Shown here in pieces: positions 3,523 to 10,371 of a stretch of DNA of 64,000 nt. A program made the translations under genes and the position numbers. The notes beneath the pieces were generated by a model that was not told the DNA's origin, ran no database searches, and saw only the letters and a list, made by a program, of their open reading frames with translations. Source of the DNA: Pelomyxa schiedti (lineage: Eukaryota; Protista; Evosea); contig JAHLWZ010000179.1 of assembly GCA_020536535.1 (NCBI GenBank), forward strand, positions 1-64,000, read 5' to 3'. Numbering within the stretch: position 1 is the first letter of the stretch; each line of letters opens with the position of its first letter.

Positions 3523-3834
3523 GTCGTGCTTGGCCCCCTCTTACTTTTTTTTTTCTTTCTTCGTGACTGTTATGCTCTGATGCATACTCGGAAAATAGAA
3601 CGATAGAAAACGTACGAAAAGAACGAAGTACAAAATTTTGTTCTTTTGTTTTGGCAAACACATTAACAGGATATACAATACAGGTATAATGACGGAGTGT
3701 TGAATGTGAGTGATGTGAAGAAGAGGGGCAGTGGGAATTATGAATGAAGAGGGGATGTGATGGGGCTTGTTGGACCATTATCAACACACTACAGGTGTGG
3801 ATATGGCCGGTCTGTGTGTTTCCATTCCATACAA

Positions 3835-6800
3835 TCAGGGGTCACCTGTTTGGCTTGCCATTGTGTTGGTTGGCTCAGTAACTGTTATAGCTTCTAGGGC
3901 CTCCAGTTGCGGGAGTACCGTTACCATCCCCGGTCTTGGGGCCTGTGTACTTATAAGGCACTGCTTGGCAATTTCATAGAATCCTTCAGTTATCTAATAG
4001 AGGTTAGTGAGTGGTTGGAGGAATGAAAACGAGAAAGAAAAGTCATTTATTTGAGAGAAGTACCTGTCTTGGCCAGACGGAATCCAAGAAAGGTGCCAAG
4101 GGGTTATCTTCACCTTTCTTTTGAAGCTCTGCTATACGGGCAGCCAGCCAGTCACCAAGAGAAACTTTGGATTTATCCTCCAGATGAATTCGAGCAGGCA
4201 ATCCCGTAAGAAGTTCTAGTAGGACAACTCCGAAGCTCCACACGTCAACCTGCCTGGCCTCAGGAAAAGTTGGAAGGAAAAAGTGTTTAACCTTAGTGGA
4301 TAGAGTTCCACTAGAAGCGTACTCAGGACATATCTAGGATTGATTATCAGAGATGAGAGATTGCGGAAGAAGCTTTACATAGCCAGGAGTCCCAGCAACA
4401 GATGAAGCTTGCTGTGACGTGTCTGGAAGAAGTCTGGCCAACCCAAAATCTCCAATCCTGGGCTCGTTGTGGCGATCCAATAGTACATTTGCACTTTTAA
4501 AATCTAGGTTTTGTTAGAGCAAATTAGCGATTCCACACCCTTATTTCAGAACCTCGGTGTATAACAGGAGGTCTAGCTGTAGCATGCAGAAAGAGTAACC
4601 CTCTGGCACAACCAATGGCAATGTTCAATCTACTACTCCAGGGAAGCAAATCACGAGACTCTGGATTTGTTGTTAAAAACCAAATATTATTGAGAGGCTA
4701 CTTTTACTGCTTCGGAAGGCTCTATGTGCTTTTTTTAAAAGCTCCTTTAAGGAGCCTCCTTCCATAAGGTCATACACAAGAGCAATTCTTTCCGTTTCTA
4801 TGCTGCAGCCTATCAAGGGAACGAGATTGCGGTGTCTAAGTGGTGTTAAGATAGAAAAAGTCCCGTTTCAATTACCTGAAAGTTGACAATAGTTGAATTT
4901 CATGCTCGAACCCTTTCTTCCCTCCTGGTTTATGGGATAGATTGATTACTTTTATGGCAACAGCAGTTCCATTGATTACAGCCTTTGTTTAATATTATTG
5001 TTTTATTATTTTTTAAAATAGATGTGTTACTCTGAAAACTGTCCCATAAGAGCCTGAACCAAGCTTCCCTTTTTCATTAAATGCTTCAGTAGCAGCTTCA
5101 ATTTCTTCATATGAGAAGAAGAGTTGTTGTAGTTGATTGATTTGGCTATTCTAGAAAAGAGTCAGATCTTGAGTTGCTTGGCGAGTCCCTTACAGCATCA
5201 GAGCGTTGTTGGGCAGTAATCACTTGTCCATCAATGTTGCAATTGGTTATAGTTGGGCCAGGGCTTTCTATCTCGAGACCTGAAATAACCGTGAGAAGTA
5301 ATCAATAGCAGTAAGGAACCTTGTGGATGTGTGATACTCCCATTTTCGTAAATCTTACAATCTATGAGAGTCCCTCCAGCGTTATCCAGATATTGTAAAC
5401 CAGCAAGGGTACAGCTGTGGACATTGCAACCGCGAATAATTGGAGAGCTATCTCTTGTGAGTTCCACACCTCCCATTGCATTACTGTGTATGTCGCAGGC
5501 GTCAATGAGTGTTGACCCTCCACAGGAGGTCAAAAGGATTCCACTCTGAATGCCATGATGAACACTGCATTTCCTTATAATTGGAGAAGCTCCATTTCGA
5601 ACTGCAATGCCGACAAGAGAATTTCTATAAATATCACACATCTCTATGAGACCACCAGCACCCCTGTCAAATCGCAGCCCAGTCTCTCTTCCATCATGAA
5701 TAAGGCAGCTCCTCACAGTTGGAGCACATTCTTTGGCGGCTTCCACATTGGCCATCCCACTGCAACAAATGTCACAACTTTCCAGTGTGGCCCCTCCACT
5801 TTGATTAAAGAAGACGCCAGCCCCACCACTGTCAATTATGCGGCAGTCTCGGATAATTGGATCACTATTTCCTGTTATATGGACATTAATGCTGGAGCTT
5901 CGGGATATAGTGCAAGATTCAATACGCCCGCGCCCATGCTCCCTATAGTGTATACCATATTTTCTGTTCCAATAGCGTTAAAGAAAAAGAAAAACAATAC
6001 AATTCTAACCTATTTCCATCGATTGTGCACAAATGTATTACAGGGTCAGCATCTGTGGCAATTTCTATGCCAGCCAGAGCATTACTGTAGATGAGACATT
6101 GTTCAACATCACCATGCCCATTGTTACAAAAATACATGCTTGGGGGTGTTAAAAAAAAAAATGAAAAAACTGTGGATACCCAGCTTGCTCGCCGTTAAAA
6201 ACAGTGCATTGTTGGACAACAGCAGTGCTGTCAGATTCTACAACCAATCCTGGTAGTTTATTGCGATGCAACCAACAGCGGGTAATTATGGGCATACTCC
6301 CGTGTTGAATGCGAATTCCAGACAGTTTGTTCTAGCACAAGTTAGTAACTAAAGCACCTGACCAACCAAGACTACCTCAAAGATGTTGCATTCAAGTATT
6401 TTGGCTTGTGATGCTCCACTCATAGTAATTCCCGCTCTTTCATTTCTATGGATAGAACACCCTTTGATGGTAGGAGAGCTGCAACCTTGAATCTGAACGT
6501 GCTTAGACTGTTTATTGATTGTACAGTCATACATCAATACCACCCCGTGCATTCATAAAAATGTTACAGTACTTGATTTTACCCTTTCCACCATTGTGTA
6601 TGGAAATCCCTAAGGCCTGTGATTCACAAATCGAACAGGCCTTTATTGTAGGTGTGCTCCCCCTTGCAATTTCAATCCCAATAAGAGCGATATTAGTTAT
6701 TGTGCAGTTCTCAATCCTCAATTTACATTCAGAGAAGTTGTTTCAGAAAAAAGTATACACACTTTCCCTTTCCATTGTCCCAGGTTGTGATTCCCACCTG

Positions 6801-9670
6801 ACCTTCTCTAATGGCAGATGAGGTTATAAGGGGATCACTTTCCCCACATATCTCGATCCCAGTACCAGATGTAGCACAAGCTTGTATATCTTGGTATTGT
6901 TATTTTTCGTATTTAAATAAGATTGGTCATACCACAAAGCTCTACCTTACCCGCCGCAGAATCAGCAAACCGTATGGCTGATATACTTGGAATGGAGCCT
7001 GGTTTGTGGTTATAAAATGTGGTGACAAATCCTTCTACCATATGTAGTCGGACTTATATTACAACGGCACAGAGACAGGGAACTTCCTTTGCCAGAAGCT
7101 TGTACTGAGGCAATGTGGCATTCATTTGCAGTCAAATCGCCTCTATTTGTCACCATTACTGTTCCTCGTAGTACCAATCCTTTAATAGAGATTTTTGCTC
7201 CCTAGTCAAGGTTAAGGAAGTAGGCATGATACCAAGATAAAAAATTACTTGCACTACAAACAGGGAATTCTCTGGCTGTTGTACAGTCCCAGAAGCCTCA
7301 AAAGCCGTCTTATTCAGGGCAAGCTGCTCCGTTTCCAAGATTTGTAAAATCCGAGAAAAAGATGGCCTAACGGACAAATCTCCACTCCAACATTTCGTGA
7401 TTAAATCGGAGACGGTCTTGGGGCAGTTCGCAGATGTCAACAGTAACCTCTTAAATTTTGTTGGCCTTGTTGCAGTTATGACCTAAGTCATACCTTGCCT
7501 TCTTCAACAAATTGTATAATTTCTAAGCAGAATGAGAAAGGTCATTAAGGATCAAGACACACGAGTTATCTTTCGGAAGTCAGGACCGGCAAATGGAATT
7601 CCGGCAAATAACCTGTACATAACCATGCCAAAACTACATGGATTAGTAAAACCCCGATTTGGAGTTCAAAACCTATAAACATCAGAAGCAGGGCAAAACT
7701 GCGTTCCGTCGTGGAAAGCTTCAGGGGCAGTGTATGCCTATCACCAACCACATCAAGGGTCATTTCCAAAAGAAAGAAGGTAAAATAGAGGAAGGGTACT
7801 AACTAGATGGTAGAATTTAGGAGGAAAACTCTTAAAAAAAAGAACACACCCGTTATTTCTGAGGGAATAGGGTTTCGTCTTACAATCTCAAAATCACTTA
7901 TGTCGATTAGAGAAAAGCTATATTGCAACGTGAAAAGGGGAAGTACCATATTTTGGCAACTATTTCAGCTGTTGGTTCCACTGCAAAAATCTGAGGTATA
8001 TCACAAAAAAAAAATGCAACAAAGTAAAAAGTTAAACCAAAATGTTTGTGGGCTTCAGATTGCGGTGAAGAATGCCATTTCTATGAAGAATGCTAACCCC
8101 TAAAAGTGGAGGTGGTTACGGAAGGTTTTTAGATGAAATGTGAAACCTTGGGCACAGTCCAATGCTATTCTGACTTTGAGAAGAGGTGGAAGCTCACTCT
8201 TAGAAAGGATTGCCTCTAAGTTACCATGTTTGGCAAATTCGAAAACCAATGATACGGATGGGGGGTGCAAGACTGAGCCAATAAATTCTAGTAATGGTAG
8301 GATGAACTAATAATACCAAATATTTATGCACATCGCATACTAAGTATATTTGGTACATGCAACTGCTCCAGCATTTCGAAATCTCGTTTAAATTCGTGTA
8401 AAGCCATTTCGTCAGTTGGTGGCGATTTTAGTACTTTTATAGCAGCCTAGATCAAAGGTTTGATAAAAGTAAAAAGGAGTTGGGAGGGGAGGCCCTACTG
8501 GTGCTTCTCGGTACGTTCCACGAAAAACAGTACCAATAGTACCCTCACCAAGGGGTGGCTCAAAGCGCTGGATTTCGTCTACCCTGTGTGAATAAAACAA
8601 GACAGGAGGAAGTCATACTTAAATCAAGCTTGGTTGTCATTCGTGATTTCATTTTGAGAGGAATAAACATGTGGTAATGTTCTCCGCGGGCTCCTTTGGT
8701 AGGTTAGTATACATAAATGTGTGGCAGGAACCTTCAACGACAACAGGAATAAGTTCATCGATTATAGTGGTACATTTCACAATAATTGTGGCAATTATTT
8801 GAGCTTTTTTTCCCTAAAAAAAATATTTATTGAGGAGAAATGGAGGTATCAATGTACCGGTTTTAGTTCTTTCGTTTTTGGCTGGAAATCTAAATCAAAT
8901 TTATGGCACGAATGCTGAAACAGTGAAAAAATCACTCGATCCTTGGCTCTAAGAGAGGAGCATCAATGGAATGGTACTCGGTAGAGCGCACATACTTGCT
9001 AGTAAATATTATTGATTCTTGTATTGGTTGGTCAATGGGGACCAAGTTCTCCTGCCCAAGTTTGAAGTGGAGGGATTCTTTGGGAATCTAAGAGAAAGTT
9101 AACTTCACTATCAAGAGTATGTAACTCACTACGAGTGGGAAATCTTCCACATTGGTAAGGCTGTGCGGAATCAATTTAAGCTAAAAAAGAATATATGTAT
9201 CTACACCCCAAGCACACACATTGAATCCTTAGGAATAACCCCAGTTGGGATCGCTGGCACAGGTAATGGTTTTGCAAGTGACGATGACATTAACGGAGAA
9301 GGGGCACCACTTGAAGGAGGCTCGTCTAATTGCCTGATTTATTTGTTTGGCTTACGATTAGGCAATGACACAGTGACAAGCTCATGACCCACCTTGGTGT
9401 TGGCATGATGATAACGCGTGATCCAACTCCTGGGTGATCCAGGGTGCACGCAGCACATATGGTCAATGATTTGGTAATCAAAATTGGGCATGCCTTCTCT
9501 ACATACTCTCCAGGTGCCACCTTACAAACAAACATCAAAACAAAAGAGGCGGAAAGAAAAAAAAAAAAAAAGAAATTTACAATGATTACAGCGCCAGGCA
9601 CGGCACGTTCCACGGCCTCACTGAGGGAAGTGCAGTCTCCGGTACTGCTGTTGGAGACGACAATCCTCAT
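3835..9670 (-). CDS. Multi-domain protein: beta-helix N-cap + TMK-type pre-kinase domain + TKL pseudokinase + PbH1 beta-helix repeats + RLK/Pelle-like kinase
   Basis: Exons join in frame through GT-AG introns. Kinase 1: [25 protein letters not shown]. PbH1 repeats such as [18 protein letters not shown]. Kinase 2: [73 protein letters not shown]. Confidence 0.85.
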
Positions 9671-9733
9671 TCAACAAACACCGACGCGACTAGATTGGGT
9701 GTGAACGGTCGGTTTTTCTCCACAAAAAAAAAA

Positions 9734-10073
9734 CCCCACACGGGACCTTCCTCTCTCCTCCTTCTCGAATTTGAGGTGTCGATCTTGTTTGTGTTTTCGG
9801 TGTCGACACCCCTTCAACTCTCGTTTTTTTCCTTCGATACCTCGAAAATAGGTNNNNNNNNNNNNNNNNNNNNNNNNNNNNNNNNNNNNNNNNNNNNNNN
9901 NNNNNNNNNNNNNNNNNNNNNNNNNNNNNNNNNNNNNNNNNNNNNNNNNNNNNACCCCACACGGGACCTTCCTCTCTCCTCCTTCTCGAATTTGAGGTGT
10001 CGATCTTGTTTGTGTTTTCGGTGTCGACACCCCTTCAACTCTCGTTTTTTTCCTTCGATACCTCGAAAATAGG
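9734..10073 (+). repeat. 120-bp direct duplication (9734-9853 = 9954-10073) flanking a 100-N gap (9854-9953); unmerged contig overlap
   Basis: Same sequence on both sides of the N run. Confidence 0.9.
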
Positions 10074-10371
10074 TTGTCAGATGAAAGCTGGGAAAGCTGG
10101 TAACCTTGATATCCAAGATCCAATCCAATTCCCTTGCCAGTCCACGATGAATCTATTTCCTCTATACTGTGTGGAGTCAGGTCCACTCCATCAACTAGCT
10201 CCACTGGATAGAAAAGCGCATGGAATTCCATCAGAGTTCTTTCCTAAACGACTTTCAACTGCAGTCGCCATTTTTTTTCTCCTTCCATCCCCAAATGTTC
10301 CCTGCGGAGCTTTTCTCTTAACACCCAACAAAAAGAAAAAAAAAAAGAAACAAGGGGAGAAGCCAACGAAA

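What the first reader, a model, noticed from the sequence alone, without database searches (positions are those of the whole stretch)
3835..9670. Soluble pseudokinase / beta-helix / Pelle-kinase protein: candidate intracellular sensor-kinase system
Seen: manual GT-AG splicing gives one uninterrupted frame with no signal peptide or TM. Order: beta-helix cap, pre-kinase domain, degenerate TKL kinase, many PbH1 turns, intact RLK/Pelle-type kinase. Known: pseudokinase+kinase pairs act as switches in JAKs and in cereal tandem-kinase resistance proteins (Rpg1, WTK1/Yr15); parallel beta-helices often bind polysaccharides. Inference: a cytosolic glycan/effector sensor coupled to an IRAK-like output, possibly for bacterial or endosymbiont sensing. 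I do not know this architecture from any characterised protein.
Basis: partly seen in the sequence, partly recalled or inferred. Interest (0 to 1): 0.88.

Follow-up and report, generated by a model that had tools for sequence, protein, structure and literature searches.

The report
Amoeba split beta-helix tandem kinase
One intron-rich gene of the anaerobic amoeba Pelomyxa schiedti encodes a soluble ~1,400-residue protein in which a bacterial-type beta-helix is interrupted by an Ig-like domain plus a dead kinase and ends in an intact IRAK/plant-RLK-type kinase; the layout is real and uncharacterised, but it is a new combination of known signalling parts, not a new principle.

Summary
On the minus strand, 9670-3835, 35 exons joined by 34 GT-AG introns (38-110 nt) give one open frame of 1,397 codons. 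There is an in-frame stop just before the ATG and no signal peptide or membrane segment. GenBank already holds nearly the same model (KAH3765956.1, 1,387 aa), misnamed 'AAA family ATPase'.

Domain order:
- beta-helix cap
- Ser/Pro linker
- ASH/MSP-type Ig domain
- TKL pseudokinase (HRN, DFE)
- about 24-rung PbH1 beta-helix
- intact IRAK/RLK/Pelle-clade kinase

Three paralogs in the same genome keep the same exon order, a more degenerate first kinase and an intact second one.

The cap matches the segment that lies directly before the beta-helix in prokaryotic relatives. So the Ig domain and pseudokinase are an insertion after the first rung. The nearest beta-helix relatives are sensor domains of PknB-type kinases from bacteria and metagenomes.

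RNA contigs confirm only the last three introns. No read spans the domain junctions.

The function is inferred: a cytosolic kinase controlled by a ligand or a partner protein. Glycan or endosymbiont sensing is possible but untested.

The scan had already noted paralogs of this gene on other DNA (s1-386771, s1-400222, s1-611545). I rate it a new variant of a known kind, of moderate interest.

The parts
9393..9670 (-). Exons 1-2 (9670-9581, 9520-9393; intron 9580-9521), aa 1-73: N-terminal cap and first rung of the right-handed beta-helix.
   Evidence: Residues 2-52 match the segment 45-100 aa before the first PbH1 repeat in 59 of the 150 best beta-helix homologues. Alignment A3 has invariant V5, A19, G34 and Y36. 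In the 1-1070 AF2 model, pLDDT is 79-90 over 1-50, 57-61 over 51-70 and about 22 in the adjoining linker. Both exons are conserved in the C579 and C279 paralogs. TGA lies directly upstream of the ATG.
9130..9333 (-). Exons 3-4 (9333-9220, 9160-9130), aa 73-121: Ser/Pro-rich linker. The 9219-9161 intron is the least certain; the alternative 9215-9181 also keeps the frame.
   Evidence: Low-complexity sequence with pLDDT about 22. It resembles the paralogs only weakly, except for the ...EDFPL(V) end.
8619..9087 (-).
   Evidence: AF2 on alignment A1 gives mean pLDDT 76 and seven strands. Foldseek against PDB finds the OCRL1 ASH domain at 4e-6, HYDIN PapD-like domains, MSP and VAP, with TM 0.5-0.64. 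Weaker leads are an Atlas score of 0.82 and, for P0009, Pfam HYDIN_VesB_CFA65-like_Ig at E 0.048. The exons are conserved in all three paralogs.
7249..8578 (-). Exons 9-18, aa 235-517: TKL-group pseudokinase. It has [18 protein letters not shown] (the catalytic Asp is Asn), DFE in place of DFG, and APE. The exon 7896-7848 may instead end at 7884, as in the public model.
   Evidence: Motifs are. Best PDB matches are MLK4, MLK1, CTR1, TAK1, Roco4, MLKL and KSR at 1e-28 to 1e-23. In the tree it groups with Entamoeba and Tritrichomonas TKLs. The paralogs read HHKLSP in the catalytic loop and have lost the Gly loop. P0009 keeps a long activation segment with an RR[DN] motif.
5194..7201 (-). Exons 19-27, aa 518-1073: the main body of the right-handed parallel beta-helix, about 24 PbH1 rungs of about 23 aa, each with a conserved Cys, Asn and Gly.
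   Evidence: Pfam Beta_helix at 2e-75 in five stretches, and NosD at 6e-27. AF2 pLDDT is 72-98 per 10-residue block over 501-1050, mostly 88-98. VIA-align gives Z up to 36.6 to autotransporter passengers, phage tailspikes, AlgE4 epimerase, NosD and polysaccharide lyases. The 40-nt intron 6532-6493 restores the repeat register.
3835..5150 (-). Exons 28-35, aa 1074-1397 plus stop: a juxta-kinase segment and an intact IRAK/RLK/Pelle-clade Ser/Thr kinase (GSGSYG, VAIK, HRDFKSAN, DFG, CPEY).
   Evidence: Best PDB matches are BRI1 3e-53, FERONIA, SYMRK and BAK1, then IRAK4 1e-38 and CTR1 5e-32. The best database hits at 39% identity are sponge IRAK4-like proteins and plant PBL/PBS1 RLCKs. In the tree it lies inside the RLK/IRAK clade with 100/99 support and is sister to animal IRAK4-like kinases with 95/97. 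RNA confirms its last three introns.
3646..3834 (-). 3' untranslated region (approximate end).
   Evidence: The 650-nt RNA contig of run X1 continues 104 nt beyond window position 3750 (table 8).

Best explanation
Shown: this is a single, transcribed, protein-coding gene of Pelomyxa schiedti, one of four paralogs. It encodes a soluble multidomain kinase of about 1,400 aa. A bacterial-type right-handed beta-helix (cap plus about 24 rungs) is split after its first rung by an inserted cassette, made of a linker, an ASH/MSP-like Ig domain and a TKL pseudokinase. The beta-helix is followed by a catalytically intact IRAK/RLK/Pelle-clade kinase.

Inferred mechanism: the C-terminal kinase is the output. 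The non-catalytic N-terminal part (beta-helix surface, Ig domain, pseudokinase) binds a ligand or partner proteins in the cytosol. It then controls the output kinase allosterically or by bringing molecules together, as pseudokinase-kinase pairs do in JAKs and in plant tandem kinase proteins. The ligand is unknown.
For: One gene:
- A 35-exon open frame with canonical introns only.
- The deposited models KAH3765956.1, KAH3764471.1 and KAH3760892.1 each join the beta-helix to kinase 2.
- The cap lies upstream of the pseudokinase yet belongs to the beta-helix downstream of it.
- Only a 43-nt intron separates the last beta-helix exon from the first kinase-2 exon, and the same two exons lie close together in all three paralogs.
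- The first Met in the kinase-2 region lies after the Gly loop and the VAIK lysine.

Selection for the layout:
- Four paralogs at 42-57% identity keep the same order.
- All four keep HRD and DFG in kinase 2, while kinase 1 lacks the catalytic Asp in every copy.

Domains.

Cytosolic location:
- No hydrophobic segment.
- The beta-helix sits between two kinase domains with no TM between them.
- ASH/MSP domains are cytosolic modules.

Expression: a spliced RNA contig covers the 3' end, and a spliced RNA-derived fragment exists for a paralog.
Against: - No RNA read here crosses the cap/Ig, pseudokinase/beta-helix or beta-helix/kinase-2 junctions.
- The regulatory mechanism rests only on analogy. 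No binding, activity or localisation data exist.
- The window's pseudokinase keeps the Gly loop, the VAIK Lys and the catalytic-loop Lys and Asn, so it may still bind ATP or have weak activity.
- The AF2 model is poor for residues 73-498.
Confidence: 0.6

Rival explanations
1. One reading: a cytosolic pattern-recognition receptor. The beta-helix binds a microbial polysaccharide or an effector from prey or from Pelomyxa's bacterial and archaeal endosymbionts, and the protein signals through the IRAK-like kinase. That would be an innate-immunity-like pathway in an amoebozoan.
For: - The closest beta-helix relatives are the extracytoplasmic sensor domains of PknB-type receptor kinases from bacteria and metagenomes.
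- Structural neighbours are mostly enzymes or adhesins that act on polysaccharides.
- IRAK and RLK kinases drive innate immunity in animals and plants (established knowledge).
- Plant tandem kinases with integrated domains bind effectors directly (abstracts listed).
- P. schiedti lives with two bacteria and a methanogen (PMC10579272, abstract).
Against: - Every link is by analogy.
- The ligands of the bacterial beta-helix sensor kinases are themselves unknown.
- From general knowledge, not tested here: eukaryotic cytosolic PbH1/CASH proteins such as FBXO11 bind proteins, not glycans.
- No Death, TIR or other immune adaptor domain is present.
- No expression data link the gene to symbionts or to feeding.
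Confidence: 0.15
2. A scaffold kinase for protein-protein interactions. The beta-helix (as in FBXO11's CASH domains) and the ASH/MSP domain (as in VAP, OCRL and HYDIN) recruit protein substrates, or tether the kinase to membranes or the cytoskeleton. No small or glycan ligand is involved.
For: - The predicted ASH/MSP fold is a protein- or peptide-binding module in cytosolic trafficking and ciliary proteins.
- JGI's automatic naming of the homologues as 'F-box protein 11' reflects the shared PbH1/CASH repeat.
- Pelomyxa also has kinase-less beta-helix genes (C1079, C810).
Against: - The beta-helix with its cap aligns over 450-530 residues with proteins from bacteria and metagenomes (27-33% identity).
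- It aligns over only 230-260 residues with Pelomyxa's own kinase-less beta-helix ORFs.
- No partner is known.
Confidence: 0.2
3. Annotation artefact: two or three neighbouring genes (cap/Ig/pseudokinase, beta-helix, kinase 2) wrongly merged. Alternatively, a decaying pseudogene, or a secreted or membrane receptor whose first exon is lost in the assembly gap at 9854-9953.
For: - RNA coverage reaches only the last four exons.
- An N-run lies 184 nt upstream of the ATG.
- The genome comes from whole-genome-amplified single cells (PMC8887013).
Against: - There are no stops or frameshifts across 34 canonical introns.
- The collinear layout recurs in four paralogs with conserved exon boundaries.
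- The cap/beta-helix split forces at least the first 1,070 residues into one chain.
- Kinase 2 has no start codon of its own before its Gly loop.
- The paralogs start at the homologous Met, and a TGA directly precedes the window's ATG.
- The N-run is flanked by a perfect 121-nt repeat, which marks an unmerged overlap.
- A beta-helix between two kinases cannot be extracellular without two TM segments, and none exists.
Confidence: 0.05

Closest known systems
Plant tandem kinase proteins (Rpg1, WTK1/Yr15, Pm24/WTK3, RWT4, WTK4 with an integrated HMA-like domain)
   Same: They are soluble proteins that combine a pseudokinase with an active RLK/Pelle-clade kinase. Some carry an integrated non-kinase domain that binds the ligand (abstracts).
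   Different: In the cereal proteins the two kinase domains are adjacent and both derive from RLK/Pelle lineages. Here kinase 1 belongs to a different TKL branch, and a 555-residue beta-helix separates the two. The order is pseudokinase first. The assembly is independent, so this is analogy and not homology.
PknB-type Ser/Thr kinases of bacteria and metagenomes with a cap and PbH1 beta-helix sensor domain (e.g. P0002, P0004, P0007; Nostocales, Blastocatellia, Chthonomonadaceae members)
   Same: The cap and the long beta-helix are homologous: 27-33% identity over 450-530 residues, with a conserved cap motif. A kinase lies in the same polypeptide.
   Different: There the kinase is of PknB (Hanks) type and N-terminal, a TM segment is detected in some members (6 of 49 at the strict hydropathy cut-off used), and the cap is contiguous with the helix. 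Here the kinases are of eukaryotic TKL and IRAK type, no TM exists, the cap is separated from the helix by about 445 residues, and a second kinase follows.
IRAK4 / Pelle and plant RLCK-VII kinases (PBS1, PBL, BIK1)
   Same: Kinase 2 sits inside this clade and has all catalytic motifs.
   Different: It has no Death domain (unlike IRAK and Pelle), and no ectodomain, TM segment or acylation motif (unlike RLKs and RLCKs). It is fused behind a beta-helix.
JAK family (JH2 pseudokinase regulating the JH1 kinase); GCN2 (pseudokinase plus kinase)
   Same: The logic is the same: a dead kinase domain in cis controls a live one.
   Different: The kinase families are unrelated. In JAKs and GCN2 the two domains are adjacent and there is no solenoid domain.
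FBXO11 / SHCBP1 (eukaryotic cytosolic PbH1/CASH proteins)
   Same: They have cytosolic right-handed beta-helix repeats with the same PbH1 signature.
   Different: They have no kinase domains. Pelomyxa's own kinase-less beta-helix genes align with this beta-helix over only 230-260 residues.

Membership tests
RLK/Pelle/IRAK kinase family (kinase 2) | The kinase domain groups with RLK, Pelle and IRAK sequences and not with other TKL families. | tested here: met
   PDB sequence search gives BRI1 3e-53, then IRAK4 1e-38, then CTR1 5e-32. An ML tree of 33 rows places it in a 100/99 clade with plant RLKs and animal IRAK-like kinases, sister to sponge and insect IRAK4-like kinases with 95/97. The sample is small and hand-picked.
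RLK/Pelle/IRAK kinase family (kinase 2) | Intact catalytic motifs (Gly loop, VAIK Lys, HRD, DFG, APE-type). | tested here: met
   GSGSYG 1104, VAIK 1121, HRDFK 1226, DFG 1246 and CPEY 1271. They are conserved in all four paralogs.
IRAK/Pelle proper | An N-terminal Death domain. | tested here: not met
   Pfam finds no Death domain in P0001 at E up to 0.01.
Receptor-like kinase (plant RLK architecture) | Signal peptide, ectodomain and a single TM segment before the kinase. | tested here: not met
   No hydrophobic segment qualifies; the highest 19-residue Kyte-Doolittle mean is 1.76, in a charged beta-strand stretch. No dedicated predictor was run.
Pseudokinase (kinase 1) | Loss of at least one of the three catalytic residues: VAIK Lys, HRD Asp, DFG Asp. 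| tested here: met
   HRD reads HRN at 355 and the DFG Gly is Glu, while the Lys and the DFG Asp are kept. The paralogs read HHKLSP and have lost the Gly loop. Nucleotide binding and residual activity cannot be tested here.
Plant tandem kinase protein (TKP) family | Two adjacent kinase domains, both of RLK/Pelle origin. | tested here: not met
   Kinase 1 falls outside the RLK/IRAK clade, with Entamoeba and Tritrichomonas TKLs (PDB matches). The two domains are 555 residues apart.
Right-handed parallel beta-helix (PbH1 / Pfam Beta_helix, pectate-lyase-like clan) | PbH1 repeats and a three-stranded solenoid fold with an N-terminal cap. | tested here: met
   PF13229 at 2e-75 in five stretches. 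AF2 pLDDT is 72-98 per block over 501-1050, mostly 88-98. VIA-align Z is 36.6 to 30 against solved beta-helices. The cap motif is shared with 59 of 150 homologues.
ASH / MSP / PapD-like Ig domain | A seven-strand Ig-like sandwich of the PapD-like superfamily. | tested here: inconclusive
   It matches at fold level only. The AF2 model has pLDDT 76 from a 4-genome alignment. Foldseek gives 4e-6 to 1e-4 against the OCRL ASH domain, HYDIN, MSP and VAP. Pfam finds nothing for P0001 and only E 0.048 for P0009.
Bacterial PknB-type beta-helix sensor kinases | A Hanks/PknB-type kinase, a TM segment and a contiguous cap plus beta-helix. | tested here: not met
   The kinases score far better as TKL or RLK than as PknB-like. 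There is no TM. The cap is split from the helix. Only the beta-helix module is shared.
AAA family ATPase (the GenBank product name) | A P-loop AAA+ ATPase domain. | tested here: not met
   Neither Pfam nor NCBIfam finds an AAA or P-loop family.

The most novel reading that the evidence does not exclude
The four-gene family is an amoebozoan intracellular pattern-recognition system. A beta-helix sensor module captured from prokaryotes detects envelope polysaccharide of prey or of Pelomyxa's obligate bacterial and archaeal endosymbionts. The inserted pseudokinase transmits that binding to an IRAK-clade kinase. This would be an IRAK-type innate-immune or symbiont-surveillance pathway outside animals and plants, built by domain capture.
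Probability: 0.1. Interest if true: 0.85.

Novelty: new variant of a known kind. Interest (0 to 1): 0.5.

Why it matters
- It is a clean natural example of a domain inserted into a solenoid: an Ig domain plus a pseudokinase placed after the first rung of a beta-helix.
- It shows pseudokinase-kinase pairing arising independently of JAKs and of the cereal tandem kinases.
- It places an IRAK/RLK-clade kinase, sister to animal IRAK4-like sequences in my small tree, in an archamoeba. That bears on how old this signalling family is.
- If the beta-helix does read microbial glycans, the family would offer a way to study how an amoeba packed with endosymbionts monitors them.
- Practically, three GenBank entries carry a wrong product name and imperfect models.

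Tried and rejected
- A naive dynamic-programming exon finder with a codon model trained on a few exons gave a wrong model. I replaced it with coordinates checked against the paralogs and the public protein.
I used coordinates only from then on.
- My first model was wrong at four places. Three slips of mine were found when the frame check failed: an acceptor near 6717, an acceptor at 8949 and the start of the first kinase-1 exon (8583 moved to 8578 after comparison with the paralogs). The fourth was the donor at 6950; the public donor at 6932 is right, because the GKVELC stretch is conserved in P0009.
- The N-terminal exon 8935-9087 found no paralog in the quick own-genome search. A more sensitive local tblastn did find the paralogs.
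- The search for homologous proteins with the whole protein was swamped by kinases. With region 1-235 it found only the query itself.
- A PDB sequence search of residues 1-235 found nothing.
- MAFFT alignments that mixed fragments with the 1,070-residue target misplaced the fragments, so A2 and A5 were discarded.
- Complex prediction on cap versus beta-helix as two chains gave no verdict (score 0.16). It counts neither for nor against docking.
- VIA-align matches cover only residues 508-1070, so they cannot show where the cap sits.
The taxonomy of possible donors was therefore not mapped.
- Literature searches found no paper on kinases of this kind in Archamoebae and no beta-helix tandem kinase.
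- Exons were searched by reference, whole-protein searches used the public protein P0001, and joining was done only inside local scripts to check the frame.

Full report
ORGANISM AND LOCUS

That fits three things. The assembly has 52.37 Mb in 5,337 scaffolds, the same as the genome paper (PMC8887013). That paper reports 7.4 introns per gene. The best database hit is a GenBank protein of that species. The window is scaffold C179.

OBSERVATION: THE GENE MODEL

I translated the minus strand 9900-3600 in three frames and scanned the open pieces against Pfam by reference, exon by exon. Kinase fragments lie at 8446-7159. Beta_helix (PF13229) lies at 6742-5234, with E 1e-44 for the 248-aa exon. Kinase fragments lie again at 5150-4046.

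I then fixed exon borders by coordinate, using GT..AG, reading-frame continuity, the 23-residue PbH1 register and comparison with paralogs. The final model is as follows:
- 35 exons and 34 introns, every intron GT..AG
- intron length 38-110 nt, median 46
- 4,194 nt, one terminal stop and 1,397 aa
- ATG at 9670, preceded directly by an in-frame TGA
- stop codon at 3837-3835

A search of 1.84 billion cluster representatives with the largest exon returned P0001 as the best hit. P0001 is KAH3765956.1, 1,387 aa, named 'AAA family ATPase [Pelomyxa schiedti]'. It equals my model except at four frame-preserving splice choices. Comparison with the paralog P0009 shows the public model is right at two of them, 9130 and 6933. 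It is probably wrong at one, where it skips 12 residues of the pseudokinase activation segment at 7883-7848.

I never sent the joined model to a search tool as letters. Whole-protein searches used P0001 by reference, and joining was done only in local scripts.

RNA EVIDENCE

Four public runs of one study hold the stretch. All of them are available only as contigs. The single run recorded as RNA gives a 650-nt spliced contig on the minus strand. It confirms introns 4063-3994, 4291-4250 and 4378-4334 and a 3' UTR reaching about 3646. The contig ends in an adapter at 4429. Nothing here covers the domain junctions.

A 230-aa Logan fragment (P0273) clusters with the public protein of the C579 paralog. 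It is uninterrupted where the genome has introns, so a paralog's kinase 2 is also transcribed and spliced.

PARALOGS

The beta-helix exon finds three further loci in the same genome, on C858, C579 and C279, at 48-57% identity. It also finds two distant kinase-less beta-helix genes on C1079 and C810.

Exon-by-exon tblastn shows the three loci carry, in the same order, cap, Ig-like exons, kinase 1, beta-helix and kinase 2, with conserved exon borders. The public proteins are as follows:
- P0009 (KAH3764471.1, 1,440 aa, C279) has the full layout.
- P0396 (KAH3760892.1, 979 aa, C579) starts at an internal Met in the pseudokinase C-lobe, but it still joins the beta-helix to kinase 2.

Relatives of kinase 2 in this genome are confined to these four genes.

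Earlier notes of this scan describe the paralogs (s1-386771 with a follow-up, s1-400222, s1-611545). I read them after reaching the same conclusions, and they agree.

DOMAINS (my model's numbering)

aa 1-73, beta-helix cap and first rung. Residues 2-52 match a segment that lies 45-100 residues before the first PbH1 repeat in 59 of the 150 best homologues. The alignment shows the motif VV..G.GD..TI.EA...A.PG..I.V.PG.Y.E.

aa 73-121, a Ser/Pro-rich linker.

aa 122-235, an all-beta domain. AF2 on a four-genome alignment gives pLDDT 76. Foldseek matches the OCRL1 ASH domain (4e-6), HYDIN PapD-like domains, major sperm protein and VAP. Weak sequence leads point the same way.

aa 235-517, a TKL kinase fold. 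Its motifs are [21 protein letters not shown] and APE. The catalytic Asp is Asn and the DFG Gly is Glu. Best solved relatives are MLK4, MLK1, CTR1, TAK1, Roco4, MLKL and KSR. In the paralogs the catalytic loop reads HHKLSP and the Gly loop is gone. The domain is therefore a pseudokinase throughout the family, and the window's copy is the least degenerate.

aa 518-1073, about 24 PbH1 rungs. Pfam gives 2e-75. AF2 pLDDT is 72-98 per block, mostly 88-98. VIA-align gives Z up to 36.6 to solved right-handed beta-helices.

aa 1074-1397, a juxta-kinase segment and a kinase with all catalytic motifs. The evidence on its family is:
- Best solved relatives are plant RLKs (BRI1 3e-53, FERONIA, SYMRK, BAK1), then IRAK4 (1e-38). 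Other TKLs such as CTR1 (5e-32) fall well below.
- Best database hits at about 39% identity are sponge IRAK4-like proteins and plant PBL/PBS1 RLCKs.
- In an ML tree of 33 kinase domains, kinase 2 of P0001 and P0009 lies inside a 100/99 RLK/IRAK clade and is sister to animal IRAK4-like sequences (95/97).
- In the same tree, kinase 1 groups with Entamoeba and Tritrichomonas TKLs.
- I chose the rows, several branches are long, and no bona fide Pelle or human IRAK sequence was available by id.

No Death, TIR, AAA or other domain is found, and no hydrophobic segment qualifies as a TM.

THE SPLIT BETA-HELIX

In the homologues the cap is contiguous with the helix. Here about 445 residues separate them: the linker, the Ig domain and the pseudokinase. 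The sequence after the pseudokinase ([13 protein letters not shown]...) resumes where the homologues continue after their first rung. In the 1-1070 AF2 model the cap scores pLDDT 79-90 over residues 1-50 and the helix mostly 88-98, while the adjoining linker scores about 22 and the inserted cassette mostly 22-55. That is what one expects if the cap packs on the helix. I could not inspect the coordinates, and a two-chain docking test gave no verdict (listed under tried and rejected only).

RELATIVES OF THE BETA-HELIX

Of the 150 best cluster representatives, 49 carry a kinase domain, 47 of them outside Pelomyxa and all N-terminal to the helix. Among those with a clear kinase score, all but the two Pelomyxa proteins and one weak case (P0072) score as PknB-like rather than TKL or RLK.

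- P0002 matches PknB at 6e-52.
- It has a TM segment.
- It lies among sigma-70 and two-component genes on its contig.
- Named members come from Nostocales, Blastocatellia and Chthonomonadaceae.
- The language-model search also pointed to bacterial and archaeal Pkinase+NosD clusters (a lead only).

With the full helix as query, these homologues from bacteria and metagenomes align over 450-530 residues at 27-33% identity. Pelomyxa's own kinase-less beta-helix ORFs align over 230-260 residues at 25-28%. A prokaryotic origin of the cap-and-helix module is therefore plausible, but I did not test it by phylogeny.

ONE GENE OR SEVERAL

The arguments for one gene are these:
- The frame is open across 34 canonical introns.
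- The cap is upstream of the pseudokinase and the rest of its domain is downstream of it.
- Only a 43-nt intron lies between the last helix exon and the first kinase-2 exon, and kinase 2 has no Met before its Gly loop.
- The layout is conserved in four diverged paralogs, with kinase 2 kept intact and kinase 1 kept dead.
- Three deposited models independently join the helix to kinase 2.

What is missing is a read or a cDNA across the junctions.

HOW IT MOST LIKELY WORKS

The architecture, the catalytic state of each kinase and the soluble nature of the protein are shown. The rest is inferred. I take the C-terminal IRAK-clade kinase to be the output. The beta-helix, the Ig domain and the pseudokinase would form a non-catalytic sensing or scaffolding unit that controls it, by analogy with JAK JH2-JH1, GCN2 and plant tandem kinase proteins with integrated domains (abstracts).

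The glycan idea is favoured by the bacterial sensor-domain relatives and by the polysaccharide-active structural neighbours. A protein partner is favoured by the ASH/MSP fold and by what is generally known of FBXO11-type CASH domains, which I did not test here.

NOVELTY

I found no characterised protein and no non-Pelomyxa sequence with this layout among the 150 best helix relatives, in the length-matched word searches or in the paper searches. Each part and the pseudokinase-kinase logic are well known, and kinase plus beta-helix fusions are common in prokaryotes. I rate it a new variant of a known kind, of moderate interest.

Noticed in passing
window 9733-10074: The N-run at 9854-9953 is flanked by a perfect 121-nt direct repeat (9733-9853 equals 9954-10074). 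This is an unmerged scaffold overlap 184 nt upstream of the gene's ATG, not a biological repeat.
   Followed up: yes
P0001, P0009 and P0396 (GenBank KAH3765956.1, KAH3764471.1, KAH3760892.1): All three deposited family members are named 'AAA family ATPase'. P0001 has no AAA or P-loop domain in Pfam or NCBIfam, and Pfam finds none in P0009; P0396 was checked only by its alignment to P0001 residues 408-1386. The names are annotation errors.
   Followed up: yes
window 7848-7883; L016 (C579:84000-93999): The public model of this gene skips 12 residues of the pseudokinase activation segment. The public model of the C579 paralog (979 aa) starts at an internal Met in the pseudokinase C-lobe. Both look like gene-prediction errors.
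   Followed up: partly
L018 (C1079:~4300-5200, minus strand) and L019 (C810:~104400-105200): Two further Pelomyxa genes carry PbH1 beta-helix repeats and no exon similar to this gene's kinases (25-28% identity to this helix). They may be FBXO11-like. I did not examine them further.
   Followed up: no
window 5177-9049: DNA contigs of runs X3 and X4 differ from the window at 14 single bases and 2 short indels (for example 5177 C>T, 6816 A>G, 8830-8831 TT>GA). All runs come from one sample of whole-genome-amplified cells, so these may be alleles or amplification errors.
   Followed up: no
P0273 (Logan contig, 1,118 nt): This spliced 230-aa kinase-2 fragment clusters with the C579 paralog's protein. 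It is 100% identical to C579 in its last exon, yet 96% identical to C858 in another exon. It may be a chimeric transcript assembly of two close paralogs, or a fifth copy.
   Followed up: partly
(ESM Atlas leads): Plant clusters that combine an MSP domain with a protein kinase exist, and so do bacterial and archaeal (Methanobacteriota) clusters with Pkinase plus NosD/beta-helix. Both sub-combinations of this protein's parts therefore occur elsewhere. These are leads only.
   Followed up: no
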